The position numbers were made by a program, and so were the translations under genes. The notes beneath the pieces were generated by a model. That model worked only from the letters and a program-made list of their open reading frames with translations, did no database searches and was not told the origin of the DNA. A stretch of 64,000 nt of DNA from Euprymna scolopes (Eukaryota). The stretch lies in assembly GCA_053919585.1 (NCBI GenBank), contig CM132809.1, one strand, 5' to 3'. Below are positions 4,104 to 50,838 of this stretch, piece after piece (the first letter of the stretch is position 1; every line of letters begins with the position of its first letter).

Positions 4104-4151
4104 ATGCTACTCTGATGAGCTGTAGAGCGACGAAACATGTGTGTGTAGCGT
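4104..4151 (+). ncRNA. Degenerate type I hammerhead-ribozyme-like motif
   Basis: atgctac-t-CTGATGA-gct gtag agc-gac-GAAA-catgt...gtagcgt. Intact CUGAUGA, 3-bp stem II and ACATGT palindrome, but extra bases before GAAA and an unclear cleavage triplet. Followed by AATAAA and (TA)n. Confidence 0.45.
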
Positions 4152-4171
4152 TTTCAAAGTAAAATAAAATA

Positions 4172-4203
<32 letters not shown>

Positions 4204-4230
4204 TTTATTTTACTTTTCGACGGTGATTCT

Positions 4231-4294
4231 TGGCCTGAAGACTTAATCCCCCAACGCGGGTGATTACAGAAACATGTATGCACATATGTAGCCA
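4231..4294 (+). ncRNA. Type I hammerhead ribozyme motif
   Basis: Stem I tggc/gcca; CTGAAGA 4235-4241; stem II taatc-ccc/ggg-t-gatta with closing pairs mismatched; GAAA 4269-4272; near-palindromic stem III catgtatgcacatatg; GTA triplet 4288-4290. Confidence 0.7.
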
Positions 4295-4312
4295 TTAATG
4301 TTTGTATAAATA

Positions 4313-4377
<65 letters not shown>

Positions 4378-5849
4378 CGACAGACTTGTAAAAGGCTAAT
4401 CTTTCGTACTGTCGTGATTGGTGCACACCCGTTGGCATTCAAACGATCAAGCGTTGTTTCCTTCCTGAGTCACGAATTTCTAACTTTCGAATGTTGGTAA
4501 TTCGTGAATAGGTTCGCTTAAAAATGTTCGCTTTTTATGTTTGATTAAGCGCCATTGCATAATTCTCCCTTCAACTATTTTTACTTTTTTATTTCGACTG
4601 AAAAAAGTGTGTCTTTCTTAATCGACCGAAATCTTAGCATTGCCGGAGGAACGATAGTGTGTGTTTTAATTGGTTGAAACGTATAAGTTATATTGCACTA
4701 AAAATAATAAAAAATAACAAAAAATAAATTAAAGCACGGGATCTGCGAAAGTTAACACATTCATCACCATTCATATTTTTAAAACTTTACGTATTTATGA
4801 CCCTTCTGTTTGCTATTCGGAGATATACGCACTGGCTGTTCCTCAATAATATTTTTCTTTATTTATGTTGTTTTTCCTTTACATATGTAATCCAATGGAA
4901 ATTGAATTTTGACAATAATTGTTTATTACAAATATTAACCCCCTTATTAAAATTAATTATATCCTTATATTTTTATAAATCTACAACAATAATGATTAGG
5001 CAACTATTGATTTTATATCTAGTCATTGTTTTAGTTAATATATAATTATGAATATGTTTATGTCTGAGTAAAAGTTAGGATTGCAATGCTAGTAATTAAT
5101 TGCACTAAGTTTAATAACTGTAAAGTTTATTCAATATTGTAAGGGTGCCTTAGTTACACATGGACTGCTTTCTTATTTATTTAAAAGAAACAATCACACA
5201 TTTTGTAATAAAATACACTTTGTATATTTATTTAATACTTTCATCCTATACCCTAATGAATGTTTATATTTCAGTAAAAATCGCTTGGTAGTATATACCG
5301 GGTATAAGTATAGACAACAATTACAAATTGGCACACATAAGAATACATCTTATAAACCATTATAGCAAACAATTAAATAACTGATTCATAGTAATTAGCA
5401 TTAAAAATACTGGGATTGTTTGGGCTTTCCAGATAATGTATCGTTATTCTAAGGAATCAAACTAGACATCATAAAATGTGTTATTTTGTATTTGTTGGAA
5501 AATTGGGCTTGGTTAATGAACACAGATAATGAGCAGATAATAACACTACATATTGTGAAAGGTATCTACTATTCTCAAACTATTATTACTGTTATTAGCA
5601 GTTTGCATCTCGATTCGTATGAGTTTTTAAATGGTATTATAATTTACTGGGTTTACATAAAGAACCTCGCATGCCAGTCGTTGTTAAAATAAGAACCATA
5701 ACTATTTAGTGTGTATCCATTTTTTCCATACCTAATTGTATTTATCCATCTCTAGTCTCTACTCACTATTTTCATATCGGTACAAATAGTTTTTAATTTC
5801 CGTTATTGTATAGCGTTATAATCTACTGATTGCTATATTCTATATTATA

Positions 5850-6900
5850 TTTATTCGCCGTTGGCGTATTTTGAAGCTCGTAACTTTGATGACACAGATG
5901 TTTGGAGCAATTGTTTAATATTAACCGAGTACAGTGGCTACTAGCGCATCGTGTGAAAATCTGTTGAGTTTAGGTCAGCTAGTGTACGTGGGGTGTAACT
6001 CGTTCTCTTATGCACCAATCCATTTCTCTTAATGTGTATTGCTGTTGCCACATATTGCTTTGACTGATGCTATGAGCAACTTATGAATCTGTTATTCAAT
6101 AATATGAATAACGGATTCATAAGTTGCTCATAGCATCAGTCAAAAGCAATATGTGGCAACAGCAATAGTGAGAGCTGAAGTGTAGATACTGTATATTATA
6201 CGCTAGTTTTCTATATACAGTTGGCATAAACCTCTTACCAGTATCGGTTCTCAGCATAAGGAGTAACGATATTTGGTTATTATGTTTGCATTCCGTTTTG
6301 AATTATAGAGTAAGAGCGGAGAGAGTTCACATAGATAAGAACATTTTAATATATATTTTTGTGTAATATTGTCATATGGAAACCACATTGCTTTTAAAAG
6401 TATTGTTGAACCCAGCGTCTTTTTCTATCATATTATACATTGGCTAGAACTGGAAAGCCAACTATAGCGTAAAACTCTATACGTGACTAGTATATATTAG
6501 AGCGGGGGCTCTTATAAATATAGGTCGATTTTCTCCATGCAATTTAAAACATATAGCAAAGCAGGGTGTATATTTTCAATCGTAAATATTAATATAATGA
6601 TTATTGATTGTGCAACTTTAACTCGAACTAAGTTGAATCATCATTTGTCAGAATATTCTAGTGTGAACTAATTAAGACCGCAAGAATATTTGTTTATGCT
6701 GATATTTTGAATCCATAGAATAAAACTAACTCTTCATGCGTGACTTGTCAAATGCGTTTTCGCGCTAGTATTACAGAATAAGGAGAAATACGCTATTTTA
6801 TCTTAGGCTTGCTGACGAATAACAGTCAGTGTTAAAGAATAAACGGGTCTTTTGTTAAACCAACCTTATAATGCATCTGAGTATGAAATGTTACCGACGT
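5850..6900 (-). mobile_element. Penelope-like element remnant (RT plus GIY-YIG endonuclease), heavily degraded and internally deleted
   Basis: Minus-strand peptide relics read across frameshifts: (H)KVGL..RPV, SMD...TNI, PVLANV, WF.YDNI (YVDD-like), then KQYVAT...HKR...TLAD (GIY-YIG-like). Boundaries approximate. Confidence 0.55.
6037..6167. repeat. Near-perfect inverted repeat (62/63-nt arms, 6-nt loop)
   Basis: Arms 6037-6098 and 6105-6167 differ only by one G-T pair and a 1-nt bulge. Confidence 0.95.
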
Positions 6901-9888
6901 CAATTGAATTACAAAGAGAGGCTGTAATATTTCAGAAAATTAAAAAGAGAGTATGCAGAAATCCCTATGTGCCTAATTGATTGAAACCCTATATCTCTGA
7001 TTCGATCCTCATAGGGTTCAATAAAAAGTCTACTGCGCTTGGGAATAGCATGAAACTAGAATGACTTAACTGCTATGAATACAAAAGCAAATTCTCTCCT
7101 AGAATGTAGAGCTTTTAGCATTACATTATCCTACCATTATACATATCACGTTAAAGTATCACATCATATTAAGTAACACAGAGAAAAATGAACGTCTATA
7201 AATGTAAATTAAGGTTCTTTAATATTAGTCAAATGTTTTTGTAATGCAACGCATTAGACAGCTTAGAGCGGGAGTTTTCCCAGGTGTGTAGTGGACCATA
7301 TTTTTCACTTTTTAACTAGCTTTACAGAGGAACAAAGTATAAAACGACAGTTACACGTTTGTTACATCAAGGGATAACATGATGTTGGCTGTTTTCGCGG
7401 ATTTTCTATCGAGTTCTCGGAGTTATTTCTTTGGATTTTTTTTACATTTTCAATTTAAAAAAGAACATTTCATATAACTCGAACGTCTGACAGATTAAAA
7501 TACATCCACGTCAAACGACGTCGCACTGTCAACTGAATCACGGTTATTCCTTTCGTGTCGAAACGAGAAAGATATAAATCATGAATTTTCTAAAAGTATA
7601 CACAATTTTTGTAATGGATTACATTTTTTTCTGCTGTATACGGAATTTCAGTTTGAGTAAAAGAAAAAATACGAAATGATCTAATCTAATGACGTAGAAA
7701 TGATGTAATGAATAGAAAAGGGACGGGGGCGAAAATGCAACGGAAGAAACTACAGTTTACGCTGCCGTCTTTGGTTCTGGACAATGATAGAATTAACGAA
7801 CATATAACGCTAAATATAATGGCACTTATTGATTGAAATGCGACAGTTTTCTTTAAAGATGACAAAAAGATTATCATCAAAGTTTGCATTCACGATGTTC
7901 CTAAACACATTACATAAAGTGACATACACAAAAATCGGTATATGTTGAACTCTCAAATAGACGTCATTTCTTGCTGAAATATTTCAGTACATCAATTTGA
8001 TTTTAAAAAATGTTTGCATTATGGTCGAGTGTAGAAAATGTAAATACGGATTCGCTTGGCGTGTTTTCCGTGCGTACGAAAGCATACGGCCTTATCTCTA
8101 GGTTTCTTTGTAACGCAGTGAACACCCGCTAATTTAAATATCTCCCGTGTTCAATAACAAATTAAACTTATATGTGTTTACAAATCAGGTTTATTTTGAC
8201 ATCCAGGTTATGGTTATGGAGAAATATATTGAGTTTGGCTGGGGCGGCGATATTCCGCGTCTGGTCTGCGGTAAGCTCGTCTCTTCCATTTGATCGATTT
8301 ACCAGAACATCAGTGTTTTTAATTTTTTATTTTATTATTAAATCGAATCTCTCGGCGTTTTCTTTGTCTTGTATTGACATCGACCTCCGGTCAATTTTTA
8401 GAATAGGTTTACATCGCTGTTCTGTTTATATCATAGGGAATTTGGTGTTGTACAAGATCATCCAATTAACACCCCAGCACGATCCAGCCATATTCAAATA
8501 ATATAAAATAACTCTCGTAACATAATTAGCTATAAAATCCTCTCTAAAATCTTCCAACTAACAATCCTCGCTAAAAGCTTGATTCGAAGAAATTTTATGG
8601 CTTAGTTATAATCGCATCATTCATTGTGACGCAGGGACGTATACTGTTTACTGGTGTTCACACTGCGGGAAATAACAAACCTATATTTAGCATCAAATAT
8701 TTCAAACAATAACTCGTTTGATCATAGGATTATTGGGAAGGTGGATTTTTTTCTGTAATTCAAGTGTATAAATGTTCATCTAGGCTTCAAATGTTTCGGC
8801 TGACCAGGATTTTTATTTTATTGAGAGATTCAACGCAAAATAACCGAGCTTGGGTTTTACACTACATTCGTGGGAGAAGGAAATGGTAATTGTTTGTTTT
8901 AATTATTAAAATGAGGAAATGATGTATCAGCTTATAGCTTATCGTTTTTTCTTTTAACATTTCAAAAAGAAATCATTAAGTTATAGATTTGAATGCGCAC
9001 AACCATTAAAAAACAAAAAAATTGCGGAATGACTCGGAAGCAAAACACGCAAAGTTCTGTCAGTGTCAGGATGAAAACTACTACCGCTGCTACTTCTGCT
9101 GCTGCTGCTGAGCATGATGCCGATGGTACGGTGGTAAGAGTAGTAATAGTACTGTTGGCGATACAGTAACAGGAAAAACAGCATTAACAGTGACATTAAA
9201 GACCATTTTTTGCATATGTTTGTTTTTTGTAATAGGCACCTTTCAAACTTGTATAAATAGTTTATTTTTTAATAAAACTGTTTCTTTTACTAAAACCTTT
9301 TGGCGATTGATTATTGGCATGTTAAATTTACTTTTGTTACTATTGTCGAAAATGCTCAGGTAAACCACGTATAAAACTTACACGGGACAGGGGACCACCT
9401 ATGAATTTACTTTTCCCTTGATTATGACGATGATGCCCCTGATATTGAAAACGATAATGGTGACGAGTGTGATGATAATGATGATGTCGACGATGACGAC
9501 GATGTTAGTTATGTACCGATAGTAATAATAGTAGTAACATCAGCATTAAAATTATTTTAAATATTTCCGATATAAATATCCGGTTAATATCTAAATTCTA
9601 TTTTTTTTCTAATAACGAATGTAAAGCAATATTATATTTCTTGATTGTCACGACAAAGTTGGAAAAAGTTGTCTCGCAAATCTTATTTGGCAAATCATGG
9701 AAAACTTTTTCAGCGATTGGGGACCGCCTGTGAATTTTACATTTCTTGACACTTGCTCTTTCGAAGGAAGCCAGTTAAACGCGCAGGAATTGTCTATATG
9801 ACATATAGTTTTAGTGTAATGTTCAGAAATCGGTTGAATGACGATTATTGATAGAATAAAGGATGAAATTTGGAGGTACTGTTCTCAC

Positions 9889-18908: not shown

Positions 18909-19042
18909 NNNNNNNNNNNNNNNNNNNNNNNNNNNNNNNNNNNNNNNNNNNNNNNNNNNNNNNNNNNNNNNNNNNNNNNNNNNNNNNNNNNNNNNNNNNN
19001 NNNNNNNNNNNNNNNNNNNNNNNNNNNNNNNNNNNNNNNNNN
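18909..19042. other. Assembly gap; others at 24392-24531, 31744-31874, 35754-35884, 36438-36569, 38522-38680 and 58016-58157
   Basis: N runs of 131-159 nt. Confidence 1.
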
Positions 19043-19256
19043 CGAAATGATCCGAGATTATAAAAATAAGTATATTATAAATATTAAAGAATCAATATTT
19101 ATAAATTAATCTCAACCAGATGTAAAAGCTCGATAAAATCAAATAGGAGATAGAGCTTATAATAAGAGCAAACAGTTAAGAAAACATGTTAACACACTTT
19201 GAAAAAGAGTTAAAACATATTTATTCTAAAAAGGGCACACTTGATAAGTGGATAGT

Positions 19257-19305
19257 CCTTAAGCGGAGTTTTGAAGAAATATTTTCCTTCTCATCAGAGG
19301 GTAGG
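19257..19305 (-). ncRNA. Degenerate hammerhead motif in the inverted pLTR copy
   Basis: cct-CTGATGA-gaagga aaatat ttcttc-AAAA-ctccgct-TA-agg; G12 of GAAA lost. Confidence 0.55.
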
Positions 19306-21328
19306 AATTAGGCAGACTGCGGAATCGGATTTTGCATACAAAATTATTTGATGAAACTTCAGTCAAAGATTTCACTTGATAACAAAAGGTGAAGCAGAGG
19401 GAATATGGTGAAAAAAAGGTGATTACACGTTAACGGATAGTCTGGTGAAAGGTAAATTATCCAATGACGGTAATATCCAAAAATATAAATCTAAGAAAGT
19501 TAATTGAATTTTCATTCGCACGAGTAAAATCCAAGGAAATCACGTAATTGGAAGATGGCCCAAAATAATCTACAAGGCCAAAATCCATGGAATTATTAAC
19601 AAATATGTACATGGATCATAAACCTAATTTCTATGACAACTCCTCCATCAGTTTGATCTGCCCATCTAACTCTGACTTTGGTGCTGTAAGCCAAAATATC
19701 TCATCATCCCTTCATCAAAAAACAAAAATAGATATCATCCCTTCTATTAAAGAAAAATGAAGTTTCTCTCTTTGGCTAAATTCAGATTCCGTAATTAATT
19801 GATTTGTCTCCCTTAAAAATAAAAACCTCCTTAACTTCATAACATTTGACATCCAAAATTATTGTCAATCAATTTCTCTTATCCTGTTAAACAAGCACTA
19901 ATCTTTGTTAAAAGAGATTCTGACTTAACTAATTTAGAAATTAAATTAATTCTCCTAACGAGAAAGTCCCTTATACAATTTAACAATAAGCTTTGGACTA
20001 GAAAGGACACCCTTGATAATTTAGACATCTTGATGGGGAGGGGGGCTTCTGACTCTGTAGAAGTAACTGACTCTTCTTACTGAAAGAACTTAAATACAAC
20101 TTTAAACATATTCAAGTGGCCTTTATAGAGACGATGACTTTTTTACTACAACAACCAGACCAAGAGAGTACAACACAATTAAAAAGTACATAACTTCTTT
20201 AATAACTTTGGTTTTTCTATGATTATCGAATCAAACAAAAAAAACTTCAAATTTTCAAGATTTTATACTTAAACTTAACACCTAAACTTATAGCCCCTAT
20301 CATAAACCCAACCTTACGCTTTTATACGTCCATAAATCTTCTAACCACCCCAACTCAATAATAAAATCTATAGTACCATCCGTCACTAGAAGGATTTCTA
20401 CTCTTTCTGTTGATAACACAACTTTTAATCAAAATGCTACTTTCTTCAATAATGCCTTAGGACTCAGGGCACGAGGAAATATTAAATGCAACCATTATGC
20501 TCCTCCTGTAGGCCGCCTTAAATCTGTAATCACACACAATATGACTCGTAAGAAACCAGTTAAATAACAAGATCTGCTGCTATCAATTAAAATGAGCCAG
20601 TTTACATATATAATCTCAACCAAAATACTAACCGTAATTTCTCTAACCCACCCAGTCGCATTAGGAGAAAGAAAAATATTTGGTTTACTCCTCCATTTAG
20701 CCTAAATGTCAAAACTAATATACCTAAGGAATTCTTCAACATTGTACAAAACCCTTTCAGATACCAACACATATATAGGTCTATTTTCAATAAAAACTCA
20801 ATCAGGATTTCTTATTCAACAATGCCTAATTTAGCACAAAGAAGCTTAATATCTAATAATAAAAAATTAAATCCGCCCCAAAAATCGCTTTTCCAATTAA
20901 ACCCAAAACTAAATAATAAATAATATGTAAATGTAATAACAAACATATTTGCCCAAAAAATGATGATTGCATCCATAAATATGTTATGTATTCATGCACA
21001 ATTACTGAGCTCCCACGCAATCCTCCCAAAACAACCACTAATAGTTCGTATTCAAGTTATCCTTCTCCCCATCCCCCATATGTTGTAGTTACTAATCCAA
21101 TATACCACTCTAGCAGCCTCTCGATCTACAATCATACAACTAGCAATAATAATAATAATAATAATAATGATAATAATAAATGATAATAATGAGAATAATA
21201 ATATTTCTCCTAACAGCCATGCTAACACTAACAACACTCATTATCCCCTCCAAAATAGTTCTCGTACATTTGTTTAACACTGTGAACAAATTTCAAACTA
21301 TTTAACTAATACAAATCAGCAAATTAAT

Positions 21329-21380
<52 letters not shown>

Positions 21381-22737
21381 TCAGACCTCGAGCTTTTAAT
21401 AAAGTACATACATAAATCGACGCTACTTCCACATTAATTAAGAAAACATATCAAATCAAATTTCTTCTTTTAACATGCATAATTCTAATCATAATCAAGG
21501 GACTTCTCTAACCACTTTAATTTAAAAACTTAACTCTAACAATACCCCTATATGGACTATCATAAAAAAGTTATGCCATACTCGAGGCTCTAAGTCATGT
21601 CGCCTCTGCACAACCGAAGGTATAACTATAATTACTTCTCAAAGTAACAATATAATACATTTTAAAAACGAACTGATCTCTTTCTGTAAACATAATCCAA
21701 ATTTAATTATAGTAATTTTGAAACGACATAGTTATTACTTTAACCTTTCAGATGAATATATCATTTTTCTTTAGTATTATCTTTTTTTTTCTACACAGTT
21801 TTTTTTAATATTTATAATTTAATAATCCTTTATTTTAATTCTTTATTATTTCTTTGCTTGACCGATTTTTATCTGAAATTTTCGTGTTAGTCTTAAAATA
21901 TTCCTAGCTATCTAACATATCAATCTATCTACACATTCATATCCTGTATGTATATTTACTTATATCTTACTGTATGCATTTACTTACATACTTACTTGCT
22001 TTATCCGGAATTTGCAGATACTGGCCATCCTCTCCCCTTAACAATTGTTTCTTATTTTATATTTTATTCTTTCTTTAATTGTATTCATTATATATCATTT
22101 ACTTATTTATTTATTTATTCCATTTAGCGTCTATTAACAATCTTGCTGACAGTTTCTTAAGTAATAACCTGTACATTTCAATTGCCCTATATTTTTTTAC
22201 CTACATTTTCCGCGCATTTTAACATCAGTCTGTCTGGATCATTTTGACATTTGCTTTTCTATTTTATATTCTATTCTATCACCGTTTAATTTTTTTCACT
22301 TCTTCTTCACTGGTTTTTCTCTTCTTCTTCCCTGATCATTCCTAATTACATTATGTCTCGGCAGCCGTGCCAGATGCATATATTTTTTTCTATTATTAAT
22401 ATTATTTGAATGTTCCCCCTTTTCCTTGTACATATTTGTAAATTATTCCATTGATTTCGACCCTTTGGATTATTTTTGACCATCTCCCAATTTGGTGATT
22501 TCTTGGATTTTACTTGTGCGAATGGAAATTCAATTAAGTTTCTTGGATTTGTATTTTTGGATTTTACCGTCCTTGGATAATTAACCTTTCACCAGACTAT
22601 CCATTCACTTGTAATCACCTTTTTCTTCACGATATTCACTCTGTTTCACTTTTTTTATTACCAATTAAGATCTTTGACTTACTTGCAGTTTCATCAGATA
22701 CTTTGTATGCAAAATCCGATCCCGCGTTGTGCTAATT

Positions 22738-22789
22738 CCTACCCCCCGATGAGAAGGAACATATTTCTTCAAAGCTCCGCGGATTAAGG
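22738..22789 (+). ncRNA. Degenerate hammerhead motif in the 3' pLTR
   Basis: CCGATGA-gaagga acatat ttcttc-AAAG-c-tccgcgga (palindrome)-t-TA-agg. This copy and the inverted copy together suggest an intact ancestral consensus. Confidence 0.55.
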
Positions 22790-22880
22790 ACTATCCACTT
22801 ATCAAGTGTTTTCTTTTTAAAATAAATATGTTTGAACTCTTTTTCAAAGTGTTTTTAACATTTTTTATTAACCGTTTGCT

Positions 22881-22924
<44 letters not shown>

Positions 22925-30845: not shown

Positions 30846-31874
30846 TAAACAGATTGAAAAAGTTGCAAAAATACAATAAAACACCAAACGATAAGTTTTG
30901 TATATACATTTTCCCCAAATTGATCAAAGCTTATTGATCATAAAATGTTTCAAGCACATAGAATAAACTTTATTTTGAATCTTGGGAAAGTAAATGTTCC
31001 AATTCAAATTTTGTATAAAATATGTGATTGTTGAAAATTATAAAAAAACACGCTCGTTTCCTACTACTAACCCTGAGTTTCGGTGGCACTACTAAAAATA
31101 AAGAAATTATATGTGATTTAATTGCTTAGCTGATGTCGGCGAAAAAGTAACCTCTGTTTGTGAAAACTGCCCAATTGAGAATTAAGGAATGAATGTTCTG
31201 ACTGATTTTCGACATTTGTCCTCCAAGACATCGTGCTTGAAAACGATACCGATCTGGTTAGGATCCATTGTGTATGTCAAAAATCTTTAGCAGACATACA
31301 AAGATAAACACACATTCTTCCTTTTATATATACACATATAGCTGAATCGAAAAGAGAAAAGAGTTCTTAGGATCGTGTATGTAATAGTTAGATATGGTTG
31401 GTGTAATAACAGAATTTGCGGAACGTGTAAGATTTGTATCAGAGACAAATGGTAGCAGTGGTAGAAATAAATATTTAGAGAGAAAAATCAGGACTCGTTT
31501 CTCTAAAGATGATATTTGATTTTGATGGCGTTTCTCTTTGGATGCACGGTCGCATTTTATTATCACGATTGCATGTGTTTAAAATGGTGTTCGAAAGCTA
31601 CATAAGATAGTGAATATTAGTATAGATGCATTGCATTTTTATGTGGCATCTGTTGTTGTTGCAAACTTACAAAAAGTATATATATATATAAATATAATTA
31701 TTTTTTTACTATAATAATTAATTAAATACCTATAGACACTAGTNNNNNNNNNNNNNNNNNNNNNNNNNNNNNNNNNNNNNNNNNNNNNNNNNNNNNNNNN
31801 NNNNNNNNNNNNNNNNNNNNNNNNNNNNNNNNNNNNNNNNNNNNNNNNNNNNNNNNNNNNNNNNNNNNNNNNNN

Positions 31875-33253
31875 AACGGTCCAATAGATATCATATTTAG
31901 TCAATAGAATCTCATAATATTTGTCCAAATCGAAGGTTATTATGTAGTACTATATGCATTGAAAACCGCTCTTTCCGATGCAACATTTTATTTCTAAAAA
32001 ATTGAATACTAAAGAAATAACAAAATATTTTTTTTAATTAGTGTGTTCAAAATTATTGGCACACTTTTTTTTATTTTCATCTATTACCAATTTCATGTTT
32101 TACATGGTTTCGTTAGTTTTTTATAGCGTTGCCATGCTTATTAAATGGTAATGTTTAAACCTTTCTTTTTCAGATAATTTTTAGAAAGGGTTTGGTTTGA
32201 ATTAATTTAAGCTAAGGAATTGTCGTTATGTTTTAATCTAAGGAACACAGCGAAGACCTCAGGAAGCGTGTAATTGCGTGTCATTCCAAAGGGGAGGGCT
32301 ATGATAAGATTTCTTAGAAGCTAAACCTTCCAAAATTCACTGTTCGAGCCATTGTAAAGAAGTTCAAATCACAAGGTCACGTTATGAATTTGGAAGTTTG
32401 GGGAGTGTTCGACGTGTCAACAAAACAGAAGCTCTGAAGTGAAAATGTCTCGACCCACACTTGGTTGAGTTTTGAAGAGAGCTGGTTTGAATGCATGTCG
32501 CCCGAGGAAGACTCCCTTACTGAAAAATGTGCATCTGAAAGCAAGGCTAGAGTCGCAAAGCGCCATGTCGATAAAGATGCTGTCTTCTGGAAACATGAAA
32601 CATTGTTCGACGAAACGAAATTTGAGTTATTCAGCCATAATAGTGTTTCATCTGTTTACAGGAAATCTGGCGAAGCCTTCTTGCCTAAGAGCACCATACG
32701 AACTGTGAAGCAAGGCGGAGGCAGTTAAGTTAAAGTCATTGACATCATGAAAAAGAAGGAGTATGTTAAAATCATGAATAAAAACCTAAAGGACTCTGCT
32801 AGAGAGCTGTCACTTAGTCGAGGTTTGTGCTTCATGCAAGATAATGGCCGAAATCATTCGCCGAATCTGATTAAGAAATGGCTTGAGGACAACAATATAA
32901 ATGTTTTGGAATGGGCATCTAATGGCCCGGACGTAAATCCACTTTAAAATTTGTGGAGGATTTTAAAATTGATGGCAATGGAGATGAAGTCTTAGAATTT
33001 CGCACAGTTGCAGGATTATTCTCGGAAGGAATTAGCTGAATTTACTGCTGAAGAATGTTAGTGGAAAACTATAATAAACGACTACGAGATGTAATTAAGG
33101 CTAAAGGTCATACAATCGATCGTTAGAATTACGGTGCAAATAATTTATTAACAAGGGAATTCTGCAATGCGTTTGTAATTTCTTAATTATTCATTTTTTG
33201 AAATTCGATATTTTAGTTGACACGAGCAGTTAATATATATATATATATATACA

Positions 33254-33427: not shown

Positions 33428-35331
33428 CACAGTGATCACCACTTATCAAGGCCCGGAAGCCACTCAGGGATAAGGGTTATTGCAAGTACATCACGTTAGT
33501 GAGGAGATTTTATGAAGTGTTTAATTAGGGGGGCGGTTCATTAGGAATTTGTTAACATTAGACCTGAAGACATCTAAGTTGTAGTCCGGAGGGAAGCAGG
33601 CAGACGGAACAGAGTTCCACAGGCGTGCAGTTCTAAGAAAGAAGCTTTGCTCATGAAATCCGCGTTTTGATTTAGGCACAGATATAGAGTGGGGGAAATT
33701 TTTCACAGTGGATTCAGCTAGACGGGTGTTTTTCGTGAAAGTTTGGCGAGGGGGGACCAGGGATTGGAGTTCAGACGAGCACCTGCCATGAAAATAACGA
33801 TAAAACAAGGATAGGCTCGCAACGTCTCTTCTGTGGGAGAGGGGTTGCAGGGTAGAGAAAAGGGCATCCCCCACTAAACCACGAAGTCTATTTTGTACTC
33901 TGTCAAGGCATGATAGGCTGTTTTTGGCAGCTCCTGCCCAGATATGGCAACAGTATTCCATCCTTGGCCGTACTTGGCTTTTATATAGATAGAGAATTGC
34001 ATCAGTAGTGAGATATCTTCTGGAGCGGTAGAAGGATCCCACCATCTTTCCTGCGACCTTGGCAACAGACTTGATGTACGTTTTCCATTTCAGATCAGGA
34101 GTAAAGGTCAAACCCAGAAGCTTGTCAAAACACGGGGCCTCACCCAGACGAGAGCCATCCATCATAATTGATGCCAGCTGGGGATCAGAGCGTTGATGAT
34201 GTAAGGATAGGAGTTTGGTTTTAGATGCATTAAAGGTAACTAGCCACATCTTCCCCCACTGAACCACGAACTCGAGATCAGAGGAGAGAGAATCCGAGAG
34301 AACTTCGTCATTTACAGCCTTTGATGTGTTGCCGTAGATGGTCGTGTCATCAGCATAGATGTCAATGAATGATTTAAGTATGTGTTTAGGGAGGTCATTG
34401 ATGTACATCAGGAAGAGAGTTGGGCCGAGGATTGACCCCTGAGGGATTCCAGCATTTATATTGCAGGCCTCCGATTTTTGTCCATCTACCACTACTCTTA
34501 TGAGCCTATCGGACAGAAATGATTTAATGATTGAGAAAACATTTCCAGTTATACCGTAGCTGGAAATCTTGTGAAGTAGACCCTTATGCCATACTTTGTC
34601 AAAGGCCTTTGATATGTCAAGAGCAATTGCCCTAGAAAGGAAGCCTTTGTCAAGAGATTCACTAATCCTGTGGGATATAACCGTCAGCACATCTGCGGTA
34701 GATCTTGCAGAGCGGAAACCATATTGTGTGTCACTAAGAAGGTTGTTTCTGCTGAGGTGGTTGACTATTTCTCTATTTAATATTGATTCCAGTAACTTAC
34801 TCATAACACAGAGAAGACTTATTGGTCTGTATTGAGAGGGAGATGACTTATCACCTGAATTCTTTAATACAGGGCAAACTGATGAGGTCTTCCAGGGGGT
34901 CGGAAAGCACTTCTCCTTAAGGCAGCGCTTAAATAGTTTCGTAAGTATGGGAGCAAGTTCTGGTTGAAGCTTTTTTAACACTATAATTGGGATGCTATCA
35001 GGGCCAGTTGCTTTACTGGAATCTAGGTTTTTTATTAGCTTGGCGACCTCATGCACGGATATTTGTATATTACCTAGCTTGTTCTGTGTTATAGGAGGAA
35101 ATATGGGGAGTTGATGGCCTTCGTCGCATAGGGTAGAATTAGCTGCAAAGTTCTTTGCAAATAGTTTGGCCTTGTCTGACGCTGACGAGATAACCTCTGG
35201 TCCATTGATAATGGTTGGGATAGAACGCACACTTCTGTTCAGGATCCTATTTGTTATTTGCCAAAACTGGTGGGAACCAAGCCGCTGATCAGCTACCTTG
35301 GATTTAACAGACTGAGCATATAGCTCTCTTG

Positions 35332-35335: not shown

Positions 35336-35367
<32 letters not shown>

Positions 35368-35370
<3 letters not shown>

Positions 35371-35683
35371 CGCATATTTTATTTAAGAGGATCTTCATTC
35401 TTCTTTTTCTGATCTTTCTTTCGAATTTTTCTTGTTTTCGTACAAGTATTTTTGTTGTGGGATCCAAAGTTCTTATAAAGTTCCCTAGTTTACCGAACAT
35501 TTTCGGTCTCGATTGACCATCATTAGGGTTGTTCTTCCTGTGCATCCTACTTATTGATTGATTTGTTATCTATTTTTATTACTAATTTATTATGTGTAGT
35601 TTCGCCTAATTTGAATTTTTCCTTTCTCTTCACCTTTATCGTGTTAGAATAGGTGTATATTATAGGCTTTACTATATAGCAAG

Positions 35684-35686
<3 letters not shown>
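35368..35686 (-). mobile_element. Solo PLE pseudo-LTR with hammerhead motif and start of ORF, flanked by (TA)n
   Basis: MFGKLGNFIRTLDPTTKILVRKQEKFERKI...ILLNKIC resembles Penelope-type ORF N-termini and starts inside a hammerhead motif. Confidence 0.7.
35492..35530 (-). ncRNA. Minimal type I hammerhead motif (core CUAAUGA)
   Basis: acc-CTAATGA-t-ggtc aatcga gacc-GAAA-atgt-TC-ggt; G5 substituted. Confidence 0.6.
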
Positions 35687-35720
<34 letters not shown>

Positions 35721-36003
35721 CCTTGTTATATAGTAAAGCTTTGATACAATAAANNNNNNNNNNNNNNNNNNNNNNNNNNNNNNNNNNNNNNNNNNNNNNN
35801 NNNNNNNNNNNNNNNNNNNNNNNNNNNNNNNNNNNNNNNNNNNNNNNNNNNNNNNNNNNNNNNNNNNNNNNNNNNNNNNNNNNNAGACATAAACTGATAC
35901 TTTAACAGTAATCCCTTTGTTTATTGGCGAAATGCCTTAGTAAATCAATGAAAGGCTATATCGATTCTCAAGGGTGCTCGAGCTGTAAAAACTGAGCTGA
36001 AAC

Positions 36004-37904: not shown

Positions 37905-37960
<56 letters not shown>

Positions 37961-37965
<5 letters not shown>

Positions 37966-38353
37966 CATCTGAGAGTGCTCATCGATAAGTGACAATTTTG
38001 TTAAAGAGGTTGATTTATTATTTACTATAATAATTATTAATCACCTACAGACACTAGCGTTTCATCCTTTTGCGAATCATAAGTGAAGGATGTCACAGTA
38101 AACGCCAGTCGAGAGACTCGAGTCTCGGCAACAGAAGTCATGTCTGGCTCATTAGCAAATACCAGAACAATTCAATTACCGTCCACCACGAGATATACTG
38201 TTAAATTTAAACATTTATTCTTAATAAATGCTTTTAACGTCAGTCAGAGTGATCTAATCATTGTATGACGATATGCGCATATAAGATAAGTTAACATACT
38301 TTACTACAACTGACAGTGCTCAACGATAAGAAACAATTTTCTTAAGGGGGCTG

Positions 38354-38434: not shown

Positions 38435-38680
38435 TGTTTATTGACATTTAATTCCGAAATATTTTTCTTTTACTATGACTTTTAAAAGGCTTCTCTTCAT
38501 AAGTACAATATCTGAATTGTGNNNNNNNNNNNNNNNNNNNNNNNNNNNNNNNNNNNNNNNNNNNNNNNNNNNNNNNNNNNNNNNNNNNNNNNNNNNNNNN
38601 NNNNNNNNNNNNNNNNNNNNNNNNNNNNNNNNNNNNNNNNNNNNNNNNNNNNNNNNNNNNNNNNNNNNNNNNNNNNNNNN

Positions 38681-39685
38681 ATTAAAAATCAGTTTCATAA
38701 GAAGGAACAACAACAAAGTCAATTATCGTTGGTTTAAATTTAATAAATATAAACCACCTTAAATCATTCAAAATTACTCATTAGTAAAAATAGATTACTT
38801 TTTTTTTTTTAATAAATTAAGTTAGACCAATTACCGCCCTTAGACTCGTAAATCAAATAATAAATAAAGCCAATAACACATGGCAATTATCTCCCCTTAA
38901 GAACTTGCAAAATAAATAGTCTCTCTATATAGATATTAACTGTAGCGTCTTTAAATCAAAATACGCTAACGGAAACAATTTACTGCACGAGCGTCGCCCT
39001 TTTAAAATTCATCATTCAATAAAATAAAAAGCTATAGCAAACATCTAAATGCCTACTTTAAATACAGTTCCTGATTTCAAAAAAAGAAAAACTAAAAGGT
39101 AACTATATCTATATATTTTTAAATCAAATTTATTATGTAAATTCAAAAAAATATATATTTTTTCTACTCATTTCTATCTCTAACCTATACTAATTTTCTT
39201 ATAAATTTTAAATCCAAACCTTTTACTTCAATTTTTCAGATTCATCTGCCTTACTTTTAATGCTAGGTTTATTTTTGGTGTCTTTTCAATTCAATAGAAA
39301 TCCTCCTAAATTTGTTGATGAGGAGACCGTGCTTACCAAAAAAACTATGTATAATTGTTCTACGTGACTTCATGTATACCACAAATAAAAAGCACGGATT
39401 TCCGAAACGATCGTACAGATAATTGACTTTGTTGTTGTTCCTTCTTATGAAACTGATTTTTAATTTAATTAAAATTTGATTTTTAATTAATTTTTTTTTT
39501 TTTTAATTTTTAAATTATAAATCACATTACTTAATATTGAATTAGCTCTAGGACATTTAACTATCGAGCTTATTATATATCTAAATTACAACGAGCATTT
39601 CCTGTATTTTAATTAAACTAGTAATTTCACTATTACATTAAAATACACTAAGCTCTTTAGACTATTATTCTAATCTCCTTTAAAT
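38681..39685 (+). mobile_element. Internally deleted PLE with hammerhead-bearing pLTR and a short inverted pLTR copy, ending at (TA)n
   Basis: Weak RT relics (VRPIT, IQTF); hammerhead at 39310-39420; 38681-38727 is the exact reverse complement of 39418-39464. Confidence 0.55.
39310..39420 (+). ncRNA. Type I hammerhead ribozyme with extended stem II
   Basis: Stem I atttg/cagat; TTGATGA 39315-39321; stem II ggaga-ccgtgctt/aagcacgg-a-tttcc around a 55-nt loop; GAAA 39404-39407; perfect palindrome ACGATCGT; GTA triplet ending at 39415. Confidence 0.75.
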
Positions 39686-40229
39686 TATATATATATATAT
39701 ATATATACATACATATTCGATAAGATATTTAACATACATAAACATATCCACGTGCATACACAGATACAAACGCATTCATATATATATAAAAAGGTAGATA
39801 AAGATACATTTATACTGTAGCACAAAAATATTATCTCGGTATAATGAGGGAAACAGAGAAAGTAAATAAAAGTAAAAAAAAGGAAGATAAAACTTTATTG
39901 CTTAATTATAAAACACACACACATATATATATATTTATATAAGGAATTAAAATATAAATAAAGAACAAATATGAGTGACGTTTAATAAAACAAAATAAAA
40001 TATTTAAGTGAAGAAGGAAACGTGGACATAAAATTGTAATACCATAACAAATATCAATATTGAATGTGGATATTCGATTTCTAGAACGCAGAAAATGTAA
40101 AGTTCAATTTCACAAGCGGCAAAAACTATATTACGCAAATATAGACAATTAGAACAAAACTCTGAAAATGTAAAGAAACACAGCATACAAGTTAGAAGGA
40201 GATATTACGCGTGAAATCTTACAGAAAAA

Positions 40230-45991: not shown

Positions 45992-46043
<52 letters not shown>

Positions 46044-47025: not shown

Positions 47026-48709
47026 TTATTTTTATAACACAATATGGAATTATATGCATAGTAAGGAAAAACCTAGAAAAAACTAAAGAAAAACACGTAT
47101 GCCACTATGAGAAAGGAAGAAACAGGTAGGAGACGTAATAAAAGATCTCCATCACTAAAAAAGAAGAAAAACAACCTAGACAACTTACGCAACGTATAAA
47201 ATAGAGCCAAGTAAAAGTAAAGTTGAAAAAAAAAAACAAGACATATTTGAGTTCGAAAATAACGACAAACATGGCATTTACTATAACCGCTTAAATTATT
47301 ACGTAAGCGTTTACATTTTTGTTTACTGCTGAAACCTTGTTTTTTAATCTGTGTGATTGTATGTTTATATGTCCATTTTTACTGTTTTTATTCTAATTTG
47401 TTCACTATTTAAACAAGTCTATTTCGTAATAAAACGTATCCAATATTTTCATTAATCTTATTTTCCTTTTCCATTATTATGTTTAGTGTTTAACTTCATG
47501 ACTTTCTTGTTATCTAATTGTGTTTTAATTTAAAATAATCTTTGCATTTTTGTTGACTGCTTACTTATTTTGTTTATCCCTAAAATGTTCGTGAATTATT
47601 ATGTTCACATACTACTTCTAATTTTTTGCATTATTATTTTTGCCTTATTTTCTTTTGCATTTAACTTATGAATTCCGATGAATATATGTTACATGCGTGT
47701 CGAGTGTCATGCTGAGCAGGAAGGGCGCCCGTAAAAACAATTTGTCTTAAAATTGCACATTTTTTAAAGTAGATAACTACCTTGTTTTATCAATATATTT
47801 TTACAAAATGCATGTTGAAATTTTTAATACGGAGAAGATTAAACGCTGAATCTCGCAAAAAATATGGTTGACTGACGAATTATGTATAAGCGTATTTATG
47901 TATGTGTTCCTTTGTGTGTGATATTTCATTATGCTATCTAAAGCATTGTCCAGGTGCCATTGTCAATTTTGCGTAGGTGTAATACATCGATTACCTCTTG
48001 ATCAAAACAAATCTAAAGTGATCGTATGCCACTCTCAGTAGAATAAATCTACCGGCCTACCCCAGCAAATATAATGCATTTTGCATTTAAATGAATTAGG
48101 ATTAAAGCGAACGCACGCATGCGTAGTGAAGCCGATAGAAATCAGATCGGGGATCATCAGCACTTGATCTTGTTTGATTGTGATACTAGAAGTCTCTTTG
48201 TTTGAACGATTGGATTATGTTGAGGCCTAAAAGCGAATGGAACACATTATATGTCGAAATTGGATAACGACTTTTGATACGGAATTCAATTATTAATTAT
48301 TACTCATGATTCCCTTTTTCTGAAGATACGGTTCGCTTATTACTTGAGGTCTTTCATAGAATATGAATGAGCACAAGGCAAAAGTTAAGGGTGTGTATTA
48401 GCCTATGTTGATAAGGTCATCGGCACGTTTACCGGTGCCCTTTTGCCGCGTTTGGAATTGAAAAAGCTATTATAAGAAAGTTAGTAAACGATGTATAATC
48501 ATGATTCTCTGGTAGTTGAAGAGTATGATTATTTAGACATTACATAATTAATAGAAGACTCATTTTTTTATTAAATAAAATAAGCGTTACATCAGCAATA
48601 TATTGTTATAGCTGCGATACGTGAATAATTTTATTTTTTATTTTATATTCTTAATATTAATATATATAAATGTAAAAATGCAGACATACATAGTTTATAT
48701 ATACATACC

Positions 48710-48745
<36 letters not shown>

Positions 48746-48754
48746 GCATTAATT

Positions 48755-49560
48755 TTATTTTCTGCAAGCCATGTGCCATTGCAAAGTTTATGTTGGTTTA
48801 TATTTCGCAACAAAGTAATAAATACGCCAATTTCAGTTGCAGTCCATACGGTGGTATCCCTGGCAAATTTCAATATTCAGTTTGATAACAAACTAGTTCA
48901 TTTGCTTTCCGAATAGTGTCGACGGACTTGTGTGTGACTACCTATCTTGGAATATTAAGCTGGATAATATCAGTTAAGTTTATGGTCGTCTTCTTTTTTC
49001 TTGGGCTGCAAGAATATCTCGTTCACTTAGCCAACTGAATTTTTTATAATTGATTTGCATATCTGAACTATAAGCTATTCATTAACCCGTCTTTTAATGT
49101 AACTAAATTACAGAATTTATGAGGCAACAAAATTTGCGCTTAACTCGAATCAGCCGGCGCTTTCCGTTCTACATGTTGAACAATTGATGCAAAAATATAT
49201 GTCTGTGGATCGATCGTTCTTCAACTGGACACTCATATTATGAGTGAAACCTAATGTCTTCACATAGCGCCATAAATAGAATATTTAAGGCTAGCATATA
49301 TTTCATCCGCTGATGTTGATTGAGAAACGTTTATCTGAAACTTTTTGCAAGCAATATTATTGCATTCCAAAATAATGTGTCATTGTCACCCACATCTTGT
49401 AAGGGTCGATCAAAAGCTTCAAGTGATTTTGTGCCATTGTGCAAATGTTTTTCTATACTGGATGTTTGGGAGATATTGAACATAGGAGTTCTAAAAATTG
49501 AATGTTTAATAGAAATTTCGAAGTAGAAAACTGTTTTTAGTCGGTAGTCAGGCCGTAGAT
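48755..49560 (-). mobile_element. Helitron PIF1-family helicase remnant
   Basis: SLEAFDRPLQDVGDNDTLF..AIILLA.SFR, TSADEIYASLK, IGVFITLLRNINQHKLCNGTWL. Confidence 0.85.
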
Positions 49561-50036
49561 ATTCTGCACGAAGCAAGAGCTATGTCATTTTCTCATCGAA
49601 TGGTTGCCAAAATAAATTTAACTAGAAGATTTTATCAATTCTTCCTGATGCTTTTTCAAATTAGCAATAATTTTCAAATAACTTTTTATTCTTACTCTAC
49701 GTAATTTAAATGACTAAAACAAGATTTATGTATGTTTTGATAATACATTATTCATTATAAATAATTTAGGTGACTAACATCTGGTTGGTTCAAGTTTACA
49801 CAATGCCTTATTAGCAGAAAGTAAATTAGGTGATTATAATATTATTTATCCATATTTCATAATGTCTTACTTATGTAAGCAATTCACGTGGCTAAAATTG
49901 GATGTAATCATGTTTTGACAATACTTTATTCATCGCAATTCATTTAGGAGCATTACAAGTAGTTTTCATCCATGTTTTTAGAATGCTTTTATCACTGTAA
50001 GTAATATAGTTTACTAAAATAGGAGGATAATTAAAT

Positions 50037-50376
50037 AGAGATAAATAGAAATGGAAGACAGAGAGATAGCGTTCGAAAAAGAGAAATATTGAGGAATATA
50101 GAGAAAGAGAAGGAAAGAGAAAGAGGCAGAGATAGAGATAGATTGACTGATAGAGACAGAAAGAAACAGAGGGCGGGAGAGACAGAGGCAGAGAGATACA
50201 GAATAAAAGAAAGAGAGAGAGAAAGAGAGATATAGAGGGAGTTAGGGAAAGAAATGAGCTCAAAGAAAGGTGGAAAGAGTGATAGAGAGAGAAATATGGG
50301 GAGAGACGGGGAGATAAAGCAAATACTGATGGAGAGAGTGGGAAAGAGGGAGAGAGAGGTGCGGAGAGAAGCAGAG
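50037..50376. repeat. Purine-rich degenerate (GA)n low-complexity tract
   Basis: Read directly. Confidence 0.9.
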
Positions 50377-50698
50377 GGTTAACTACACTTCACTGTTTTT
50401 GTCATCGATCAGTGGAGGAGAAATCCTGCTGGACTGAGGCATTTTTATTTGTGTTCCTCTTCCAGGTACCACTTTTAGTGGAGCTAAATTTTTGCACACA
50501 TTAAAAACCGACCTTGTGCCTTACTCTGCCCTCCAAAATACACACACAATTACTGCTATTCGTTTATGCTTCTTGTACGGTTCTCTTGTAGCATAAAAAT
50601 GAACGTTTAAAACATAATTTAATATTTGGTGCAATGTAGTTATGTAAGAAGTATGATCTAATATATTTGGTAATTTAACTATAAACAAAAGAACACAG

Positions 50699-50740
<42 letters not shown>

Positions 50741-50768
50741 TCAATTTGTCTTTACATAAGCAGTTATT

Positions 50769-50838
50769 TGTTGCTACACAATCATGAGCTTGTTTCGGTA
50801 TTCTAGAATATAGTTACTAGAGACCATTTCAGGCAACA
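50769..50838 (-). ncRNA. Type I hammerhead motif within an about 345-bp (TA)n-flanked unit (50742-51087)
   Basis: Perfect 6-bp stem I tgttgc/gcaaca; CTGAA-AT (G8 missing); stem II ggt-c-tctag/ctaga-at-acc; GAAA; 16-nt partly palindromic stem III centred on tcatga; GTA triplet. Confidence 0.7.

What the first reader, a model, noticed from the sequence alone, without database searches (positions are those of the whole stretch)
4104..50838. Swarm of hammerhead-ribozyme-bearing elements anchored on (TA)n microsatellites
Seen: eight type I hammerhead-like motifs (4104+, 4231+, 19257-, 22738+, 35492-, 38044-, 39310+, 50769-) at seven loci whose flanks show no obvious similarity to each other. They share the CUGAnGA / GAAA / NUH layout and mostly a palindromic stem III. 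At every locus the element runs into a (TA)n tract about 25-270 nt downstream of the motif, and five are short units of about 120-400 bp with microsatellite on both sides. Known: PLE pseudo-LTRs and retrozymes carry minimal type I hammerheads with palindromic stem III that can act as dimers, and some PLEs target microsatellites. Inference: this genome hosts a diverse (TA)n-targeting PLE system with solo-pLTR or retrozyme-like non-autonomous members, about one locus per 9 kb here. Each copy has a core or stem defect, so these are probably fossils.
Basis: partly seen in the sequence, partly recalled or inferred. Interest (0 to 1): 0.85.

Follow-up and report, generated by a model that had tools for sequence, protein, structure and literature searches.

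The report
Hammerhead-ribozyme retroelement fossils in (TA)n
The eight motifs are real but mutated copies of seven small, non-coding mobile-repeat families, each carrying a self-cutting hammerhead RNA near a 3' end that sits in a (TA)n microsatellite, as Penelope-like retrotransposons and their dependants do. The kind is known, but this 5.9-Gb mollusc genome holds thousands of copies and a very young Penelope-like element.

Summary
Observation confirmed. All eight motifs lie at the stated coordinates. Each belongs to a dispersed repeat family; sites 19257- and 22738+ are the same family.

Motif scanning alone proves little. Rfam finds no hammerhead in the window, my strict descriptor finds none, and a 1-mismatch descriptor barely beats simulated sequence.

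The proof comes from other genomic copies. In every family the majority state restores the canonical CUGANGA / GAAA / UH core that the window copy has lost. For site 7 the count is 5,117 exact C-variant 25-mers against 14 of the window's T variant.

The families share these traits:
- a common 3' end at (TA)n
- variable 5' truncation
- head-to-head 5'-truncated partners
- optional tails
- in one family, tandem arrays

The genome also holds at least 150 copies at 99-100% amino-acid identity of a GIY-YIG-bearing ORF, often 835 aa open, whose 3' end also abuts (TA)n.

In three families, copies begin exactly at the predicted cleavage site far more often than at control positions. This is a genomic record of cutting in vivo.

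This is a new member of a known kind, and the scan has already flagged it elsewhere in this genome. Which helper element mobilises which family is not shown.

The parts
4040..4176 (+). Site 1: decayed copy of an old family. It has a head with a tRNA-like T arm seen by eye, a minimal hammerhead and a short tail. Hammerhead at 4106-4150.
   Evidence: One search finds 14 other copies at 72-95% identity. In the alignment the majority reads GCTACG CTGATGA GCTGTAGAGCGAC GAAAC ACGT GTA|CGTAG, followed by about 25 nt and then (TA)n. The window copy has lost the ACGT palindrome, A17 and one stem I pair. The Rfam tRNA model does not match this family's head.
4177..4203 (.). (TA)n between units 1 and 2
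4204..4317 (+). Site 2: 5'-truncated copy of a young element of about 390 bp. Hammerhead at 4230-4294, predicted cut after 4291.
   Evidence: Copies are 97-99% identical. The majority reads TTGGC CTGAAGA C-GTAATCCCC..GGGTGATTAC-A GAAA CATGTATGCACATATGT A|GCCA. The window copy has G->T in stem II. The minimum-free-energy fold is the three-way junction.
4318..4374 (.). (TA)n at the 3' end of unit 2
19043..19615 (-). Site 3: copy of the site 3/4 family. Body 19158-19615 and tail 19043-19157, running into gap 18909-19042. Hammerhead at 19255-19305.
   Evidence: The window has CAAAAC where the family has CGAAAC (G12 lost).
21383..22882 (+). Site 4: longer copy (at least 1.5 kb) of the same family. 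Hammerhead at 22738-22791. (TA)n at 22883-22924.
   Evidence: The majority reads CTGATGA GAAG..CTTC GAAAC TCCGCGGA TTA. The window has CCGATGA and CAAAGC. Copies have varied 5' ends and a common 3' end. No ORF was found.
35368..35655 (-). Site 5: copy of a family of about 300 bp with a minimal, dimer-type hammerhead at 35488-35532. (TA)n at 35337-35367.
   Evidence: 90-93% identity, with inverted partners; 250 genomic matches, majority CC CTGACGA T GGTC AATCGA GACC GAAA ACGTT C. The window has CTAATGA and ATGTT.
37966..38295 (-). Site 6: copy of a 283-bp family plus a 47-nt tail. It has a T-arm-like GGTTCGAAT box seen by eye upstream of the hammerhead. Hammerhead at 38041-38093. (TA)n at 37910-37965.
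   Evidence: about 85% identity, tandem arrays with a period of about 343 bp; majority CCCTGCA CTGA[T/A]GA TTCCCGAAAGGAT GAAAC ACTAGT GTC TGTAGG. The window has CTTATGA and GCTAGT.
38681..38727 (-). Inverted partial copy of 39418-39464, joined head-to-head to the site 7 copy. It starts 2 nt after the predicted cleavage site and runs into gap 38522-38680.
38728..39685 (+). Site 7: 5'-truncated copy of a very abundant young family. Hammerhead at 39308-39424, with a 13-bp stem II and a 55-nt loop. Predicted cut at 39415|39416. (TA)n at 39686-39707.
   Evidence: The window core is TTGATGA. The exact 25-mer with C occurs 5,117 times and with T 14 times.
50741..50900 (-). Site 8: copy of a family at 88-90% identity. 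Hammerhead at 50770-50837. (TA)n at 50727-50740, then (TG)n.
   Evidence: The majority reads GTTGTTGC CTGAAGA GGTCTCTAGT..ACTAGAAGACC GAAAC ATGCTCATGACTGT GTA|GCAACAA. The window has CTGAAAT. One subfamily has G-C changed to A-U at pair 10.1/11.1. The minimum-free-energy fold is the three-way junction.

Best explanation
The window holds eight mutated insertions from seven families of non-coding retroelements. Each family carries a type I hammerhead ribozyme 25-300 nt upstream of a 3' end that abuts a (TA)n microsatellite.

They are either 5'-truncated 3' parts (pseudo-LTR fragments) of Penelope-like elements or short non-autonomous, retrozyme/SINE-like dependants of them.

Likely working (inferred unless stated):
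1. The element is transcribed by read-through, or by Pol III where a tRNA-derived module precedes the ribozyme.
2. The hammerhead cuts the RNA. Families 2, 7 and 8 have a stable stem III and could cut as monomers. Families 1, 3/4, 5 and 6 have only a short palindrome as stem III and would need to pair as dimers.
3. A GIY-YIG endonuclease / reverse transcriptase of a Penelope-like element nicks a (TA)n tract and copies the RNA from its AT-rich 3' end.
4. A second, inverted copy is often made. This gives head-to-head pairs, partial tandems and optional tails.

Shown here: the family cores, the shared 3' end at (TA)n, the inverted pairs, a young GIY-YIG-bearing element that also ends at (TA)n, and an excess of copies whose 5' end is the nucleotide after the predicted cut.
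For: 1. The family majority restores the canonical base at each core defect of the window copies, except for the mispairs listed in the Against line. For site 7 the count is 5,117 C-variant against 14 T-variant exact 25-mers, with 0 for the backwards control.

2. Stem sequences differ between families while the core is constant. Stems I, II and III pair in families 2, 7 and 8, and the minimum-free-energy fold of their intact copies is the hammerhead junction.

3. Common 3' end at (TA)n. In family 3/4, 20 of 29 alignments have (TA)>=5 within 40 nt 3', and others have it after the tail. At the 5' side the figure is 10 of 29, against a background of 2.5-7%. The same holds for families 2, 6 and 8.

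4. Head-to-head 5'-truncated partners. In family 2 they occur in 13 of 30 loci. In family 7, 25 divergent pairs, 0 convergent pairs and 4 direct pairs about 3.5 kb apart occur among 100 listed sites. Families 5 and 8 also show them.

5. Young helper-type element. L048:3-695 encodes a C-terminus with VVYKFVCQCGADYVGKT.... The protein atlas gives 0.97 to GIY-YIG/HTH_animal clusters. Homologs carry PF26215, and one also carries RVT_1. The genome has at least 150 copies at 99-100% amino-acid identity, recurrent 835-aa open frames, tandem spacing of about 2.7 kb and inverted pairs. Its DNA stops at (TA)n in all 40 scored copies.

6. Record of cutting in vivo:
- Family 7: among copies where the base before the cut-site 19-mer is not A, about 60 of 77 are junctions to inverted, (TA)n or unrelated DNA. 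At a control position 20 nt upstream the figure is about 5 of 75. The denominator is 5,789 intact copies.
- Family 2: 37 of 39, against at most 10 of 100 shown at its control.
- Family 8: 13 of 20.
- The window's own inverted piece starts 2 nt after the cut site.

7. Literature: PLEs have pLTRs, an inverted 5'-truncated copy, tails, a hammerhead near the 3' end and (TA)n as preferred target (PMC8557442). Minimal PLE hammerheads have a long helix II, a short helix I, an unpaired nucleotide 5' of stem II and opposite-strand pairs 100-700 bp apart (PMC4209133).
Against: - Rfam models find none of these families, even in intact copies at E<=10. Only a different family in this genome reaches the Hammerhead_1 threshold.
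- Several majority motifs are imperfect: a C.A mispair at 10.1/11.1 in family 2, an irregular stem II in family 1, a C.U mispair next to the palindrome in family 3/4, and a weak stem I (3 bp) in family 5.
- Family 5 shows no excess of copies starting at the predicted cut (3 of 19).
- The young GIY-YIG element sampled (L048) has no hammerhead that I could recognise in its 250-nt 3' UTR. Its link to these families is therefore by shared behaviour, not shared sequence.
- No RT/GIY-YIG ORF of Penelope type lies in the window. The two RT ORFs there carry only Pfam RVT_1 and look LINE-like by eye.
Confidence: 0.85

Rival explanations
1. Chance resemblance: an AT-rich 64-kb window read by eye will always yield some CUGANGA...GAAA strings with a few defects, and (TA)n is common here.
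For: Rfam finds nothing. My strict descriptor finds 0. The 1-mismatch descriptor finds 5 loci against 1.4 +/- 1.3 simulated, and four of the five are not reader sites. There are 27 (TA)>=6 tracts in the window. One extra CTGAAGA..GAAA near 33047 has no stems.
Against: Every site is a member of a repeat family. In every family the majority base at the window copy's core defects is the canonical one. Chance matches would not be repaired by the family majority. The excess of junctions at the predicted cut in three families also argues against chance.
Confidence: 0.02
2. Ordinary LINE-dependent SINEs or LINE 3' fragments with a (TA)n microsatellite tail. The hammerhead would be a passenger, and the inverted pairs would come from twin priming.
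For: LINE-like RT ORFs are present in the window (33521-35230-, 60098-60958-, RVT_1), and one lies next to site 5. One family in this genome has a tRNA-derived module like classical SINEs. 5' truncation and a simple-repeat tail are also LINE/SINE traits.
Against: In the inverted pairs both arms carry the same 3' region, each ending outward in (TA)n. Twin priming inverts an upstream part of one RNA and does not do this. (TA)n occurs on both flanks. A GIY-YIG element in the same genome ends at (TA)n and forms the same tandem and inverted arrays. All seven families keep a hammerhead at the same relative place.
Confidence: 0.08
3. The elements are Penelope-associated, but the hammerheads no longer cut. 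Copies starting at the 'cut site' would reflect a transcription start or a template-switch hot spot at that place.
For: PLE minimal hammerheads cleave poorly in vitro (PMC4209133), and their role is called unclear (PMC8557442). Family 5 shows no junction excess. A lineage of site 7 with U3 still made at least 14 copies. There are no RNA data.
Against: The excess falls exactly at the nucleotide after UH in three families with unrelated flanking sequence and not 20 nt away. The canonical core outnumbers the U3 variant 5,117 to 14.
Confidence: 0.1

Closest known systems
[quoted passage not shown] 2021, PMC8557442)
   Same: Type I layout; a short or purely palindromic stem III (families 1, 3/4, 5, 6); a long helix II and short helix I; an unpaired nucleotide 5' of stem II (families 2 and 5); opposite-strand pairs 100-700 bp apart; a position near the 3' end; a (TA)n target; an inverted 5'-truncated partner; tails; tandem units about 3 kb apart.
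   Different: Families 2, 7 and 8 have a stable 5-6 bp stem III (family 7 a 2-bp stem with a GAUC loop) and long stem II inserts, so they are not 'minimal'. The tails here are 47-180 nt, not 30-40 bp. No coding part was tied by sequence to any of the seven families.
Metazoan non-LTR retrozymes (Cervera & de la Pena 2020, PMC7229834; Li et al. 2026 preprint, doi 10.64898/2026.07.22.740005)
   Same: Non-coding, AT-rich units of 150-450 bp with a type I hammerhead. Tandem arrays occur for the site 6 family (period about 343 bp) and for the Rfam-positive family (period 410 bp). The preprint proposes dependence on PLEs.
   Different: Most copies here are dispersed single or head-to-head insertions in (TA)n rather than tandem arrays. 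Circular RNA was not tested.
SINE-like hammerhead repeats of Schistosoma (Sm-alpha; Ferbeyre 1998, cited in PMC4209133; details from my own knowledge)
   Same: A Pol III-type tRNA-derived module next to a hammerhead in a short dispersed repeat, found in a genome that also has hammerhead-bearing PLEs.
   Different: Different phylum and sequence. Here the Rfam tRNA model matches only the family found by Rfam's hammerhead model (33.5 bits). In site 1 and site 6 families only a T-arm-like box is seen by eye.

Membership tests
Hammerhead ribozyme, type I | Conserved core CUGANGA ... GAAA ... U-H at the cut site, in type I order | tested here: met
   Met in the majority sequence of all seven families. 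Not met in most window copies, which are mutated.
Hammerhead ribozyme, type I | Three helices around the core, kept by different sequences in different families | tested here: met
   In families 2, 7 and 8 all three stems pair and the minimum-free-energy fold is the junction. Stems differ between families. One G-C to A-U change occurs at 10.1/11.1 within family 8. In families 1, 3/4, 5 and 6 stem III is only a palindrome, so a dimer would be needed. Stem II of family 1 and stem I of family 5 are weak.
Hammerhead ribozyme, type I | Match to the curated covariance model (Rfam RF00163 and relatives) | tested here: not met
   No hammerhead match at E<=10 in the window or in intact family copies. 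The model does find another family in this genome at 42-57 bits.
Hammerhead ribozyme, type I | Self-cleavage at the predicted bond | tested here: inconclusive
   The support is indirect: an excess of genomic copies starting at the nucleotide after the predicted cut in families 7, 2 and 8, and none in family 5. No biochemical or RNA test was possible.
Penelope-like element (PLE) or PLE-dependent element | Insertion anatomy: common 3' end, 5' truncation, partial tandems, adjacent inverted 5'-truncated copy, tail | tested here: met
Penelope-like element (PLE) or PLE-dependent element | Insertion into microsatellite, (TA)n preferred | tested here: met
   (TA)n lies at the 3' end in all families and is enriched at the 5' flank. 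Five window units are bounded on both sides. Empty sites were not examined, so 'target' as opposed to 'carried tail' remains an inference.
Penelope-like element (PLE) or PLE-dependent element | ORF with reverse transcriptase and a GIY-YIG endonuclease bearing the CCHH motif | tested here: inconclusive
   Present in the genome: the GIY-YIG-like C-terminus with C-x-C and H motifs at L048:3-695, atlas and homolog support, and 835-aa open frames. Pfam's own GIY-YIG model gives no hit, and the RT part was not read. It is absent from the window and not tied by sequence to any of the seven families.
Non-LTR retrozyme | Short non-coding tandem repeats, each with a type I hammerhead | tested here: met
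   Met for the site 6 family (arrays with a period of about 343 bp). Some family 8 copies are 387 bp apart. Not met for the window copies themselves, which are single.
Non-LTR retrozyme | Expression as circular RNA | not testable with these tools
   RNA-seq contigs of several studies hold the site 7 sequence.

The most novel reading that the evidence does not exclude
Hammerhead cutting defines the 5' end of the RNA that is copied into DNA, and the genome keeps a countable record of it. In families whose ribozyme has a stable stem III (2, 7, 8), about 1% of copies begin at the nucleotide after the cut, often as palindromic head-to-head junctions. A family with a minimal dimer-type ribozyme (5) leaves no such record. 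Together with a very young 835-aa GIY-YIG element, this would make the open question of what Penelope-associated hammerheads do directly testable in one genome.
Probability: 0.5. Interest if true: 0.6.

Novelty: new member of a known kind. Interest (0 to 1): 0.4.

Why it matters
The function of hammerheads in Penelope-like elements is called unclear in the literature (PMC8557442), and they cleave poorly in vitro (PMC4209133). This genome offers three things together:
- many sequence-unrelated hammerhead families
- thousands of young copies
- a near-identical population of a GIY-YIG-bearing element

The junction counts suggest that the cut RNA end is used in vivo. Practically, the result also shows that Rfam-based annotation misses nearly all of these ribozymes. 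It also suggests that such insertions, with their inverted pairs in microsatellites, coincide with assembly gaps: three of the window's seven gaps touch an element.

Tried and rejected
- Rfam at the gathering threshold and at E<=10, on the window and on 19 loci with intact copies, gave no hammerhead.
- My own idea that a truer relic lay at about 38110-38160(-) was wrong.
- ARAGORN finds no tRNA in the window or in 11 loci. The Rfam tRNA model matches only the head of the Rfam-positive family.
- BLAST of the Rfam-positive family against the window matched only microsatellites.
- An extra candidate at 33047 (CTGAAGA..GAAA near (TA)n 33233) has no stems.
- I looked for an ORF in the long site 4 copy and in L036 and found none.
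- I looked for a hammerhead in the 3' UTR of the young GIY-YIG element (L048:696-945). I found only a stable hairpin and a CAGACGA..GAAA string.
Families 5 and 7 were therefore sampled only through short pattern matches.
- The family 2 control was clouded by sister families that share the 20-mer.

Full report
**What the sequence is.** The window is G000:C27:5146001-5210000 of a 5.9-Gb assembly in 925 contigs. It is AT-rich, at 23-41% G+C, and has seven N gaps. Labels of public runs that hold the sequence point to a mollusc. TRF and a regex find 27 (TA)>=6 tracts.

**Checking the observation.**
- Taken alone they are weak. Rfam finds no hammerhead at the gathering score or at E<=10. My strict type I descriptor finds none.
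- A 1-mismatch version finds five loci against 1.4 +/- 1.3 in simulated sequence. Only 39315-39415 is a reader site, and two others are one repeated LINE segment.
- The motif rate by itself therefore does not carry the finding.

**Family evidence.** Each site was searched in the whole genome, and all are members of dispersed repeat families. Sites 19257- and 22738+ are one family. In every family, the positions where the window copy departs from the hammerhead core carry the canonical base in most other copies.

| Family | Majority sequence | Window copy |
|---|---|---|
| 8 | GTTGTTGC CTGAAGA GGTCTCTAGT..ACTAGAAGACC GAAAC ATGCTCATGACTGT GTA\|GCAACAA | CTGAAAT |
| 1 | GCTACG CTGATGA GCTGTAGAGCGAC GAAAC ACGT GTA\|CGTAG | lost the ACGT palindrome, A17 and a stem I pair |
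| 3/4 | CTGATGA GAAG..CTTC GAAAC TCCGCGGA TTA | site 3 CAAAAC; site 4 CCGATGA and CAAAGC |
| 5 | CTGACGA T GGTC AATCGA GACC GAAA ACGTT C (250 pattern matches) | CTAATGA and ATGTT |
| 6 | CTGA[T/A]GA TTCCCGAAAGGAT GAAAC ACTAGT GTC | CTTATGA and GCTAGT |
| 7 | 25-mer with CTGATGA, 5,117 exact copies | TTGATGA, 14 exact copies |
| 2 | CTGAAGA..GAAA..GTA\|GCC | one G->T in stem II |

In the family 7 searches the backwards control pattern gave 0 matches. Intact copies of families 2, 7 and 8 fold into the three-way junction as their minimum-free-energy structure. Families 1, 3/4, 5 and 6 have only a 4-8 nt palindrome as stem III. This is the dimer-type minimal form described for Penelope-like elements (PMC4209133).

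**Anatomy of the insertions.**
- Copies share a 3' end that runs into (TA)n and differ in their 5' ends.
- In family 3/4, (TA)>=5 lies within 40 nt of the 3' end in 20 of 29 alignments and of the 5' end in 10 of 29. The background is 2.5-7%.
- Each family also has a longer form in which a family-specific tail of 47-180 nt follows the usual end and itself ends in (TA)n.
- Head-to-head partners are frequent. They occur in 13 of 30 family 2 loci.
- Among the first 100 family 7 sites on contig C1 there are 25 divergent pairs, no convergent pair and four direct pairs about 3.5 kb apart.
- The site 6 family also forms tandem arrays with a period of about 343 bp.
- The one family that Rfam does detect forms 410-bp arrays. 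It has a tRNA-derived module (Rfam tRNA 33.5 bits, model positions 10-63) directly upstream of the ribozyme.

This is the anatomy that Craig et al. describe for Penelope-like elements: pLTRs, an inverted 5'-truncated copy, a tail, a hammerhead near the 3' end and (TA)n as preferred target (PMC8557442).

**A helper-type element in the same genome.**
- One fetched locus happened to hold an ORF end, L048:3-695. Its sequence (…NNGYP…VVYKFVCQCGADYVGKT…) I read, from my own knowledge, as a PLE-type GIY-YIG endonuclease with the C-x-C…H…H motif.
- Pfam gives no hit.
- The protein atlas places it at 0.97 with GIY-YIG/HTH_animal clusters. Sequence homologs carry PF26215, and one also carries RVT_1.
- The genome holds at least 150 copies at 99-100% amino-acid identity. 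Many have 835-aa open frames. They show direct spacing of about 2.7 kb and inverted pairs.
- The element's DNA stops at (TA)n in all 40 scored copies.
- I could not recognise a hammerhead in its 3' UTR. No sequence ties it to the seven families, so which enzyme moves which family is not shown.

**A record of cutting.** In the window, 38681-38727 is an inverted copy of 39418-39464, joined head-to-head to the site 7 copy. It begins 2 nt after the predicted cut at 39415|39416. To test this genome-wide, I asked for copies in which the base before the post-cut 19-20-mer is not the expected one. I then sorted the matches by eye into point mutants and true junctions.

| Family / position | Junctions among non-canonical matches |
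|---|---|
| 7, cut site | about 60 of 77 (about 56 loci; many read AACAAAGTCAATTAT\|CAGATAATTG, others (TA)n\|CAGATAATTG) |
| 7, control 20 nt upstream | about 5 of 75 |
| 2, cut site | 37 of 39 |
| 2, control | at most 10 of the 100 shown (128 matches; clouded by sister families) |
| 8, cut site | 13 of 20 |
| 5, cut site (minimal ribozyme) | 3 of 19, like a control |

For family 7, 5,789 copies have the intact junction. I read this as evidence that the ribozymes with a stable stem III cut in vivo, and that the cut RNA end is copied. It remains indirect.

**Limits.**
- The counts were sorted by eye from the first 100 listed matches.
- No RNA evidence was obtained.
- Nothing was inferred about the letters in the gaps.

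**Comparison and verdict.** The elements behave like PLE pLTR fragments or PLE-dependent retrozymes, and they meet the structural tests for that class. The coding test is met for the genome but not for these families. The kind is known (PMC4209133, PMC7229834, PMC8557442, and the 2026 preprint on animal retrozymes). Earlier notes of this scan describe the same class elsewhere in this genome. I therefore rate it a new member of a known kind, with moderate interest, raised somewhat by the junction record and by the very young GIY-YIG element.

Noticed in passing
window 33521-35230 (-) and 60098-60958 (-): Two RT ORFs (569 aa and 286 aa) match Pfam RVT_1 at 8e-36 and 7e-26. They look like LINE copies by eye. 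The first lies about 100 nt beyond the (TA)n at the 3' end of the site 5 element.
   Followed up: partly
window 6061-6142: An almost perfect 80-nt hairpin-forming inverted repeat. It scores as a false 'mir-873' on both strands, well below the gathering score.
   Followed up: no
window 35664-35741: A (AT)16 tract flanked by 23-nt inverted repeats (AGGCTTTACTATATAGCAAGACA / its complement). These may be two element ends facing each other across one microsatellite. Gap 35754-35884 follows 13 nt later.
   Followed up: no
L048:1060-1140 (-): Another hammerhead unit with a tRNA-like head (…GGGTTTCGATCC… GCCGCA CTGATGA GCGATGAAACAGC GAAAC AGTACT G…) turned up by chance in a locus fetched for another reason. 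This shows how dense these elements are.
   Followed up: no
L056:967-1084 (-): A 5S rRNA match at 50.9 bits, above Rfam's gathering score of 38, lies next to (TG)n/(TA)n near a family 2 insertion. It may be a 5S pseudogene or a 5S-derived repeat.
   Followed up: no
genome-wide: The 20-mer CATGTATGCACATATGTAGC (stem III plus cut site of family 2) is shared by older sister families. Their upstream part reads about AAATCACAGCTGAAG and has G/T/C in place of A15.1. Their structure was not worked out.
   Followed up: no
genome-wide: The window's site 7 copy belongs to a lineage of 14 copies on 11 contigs that share U3 (TTGATGA). Some are 100% identical over 201 nt. A lineage with a weakened core therefore still spread a little.
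   Followed up: partly
window 31702-31742, next to gap 31744-31874: A 41-nt fragment (88% identity) of the site 6 family's 3' region ends at an assembly gap.
   Followed up: no
3' ends of all families and of the L048 element: The last bases before (TA)n resemble each other across families: AAATTTAATAT, TTTAAATTA, GGAATTTAT, AAATTAATA, AAATTGAATAT, AAAATTTACTTA. This could be a shared priming or recognition motif, or just AT-rich microhomology.
   Followed up: no
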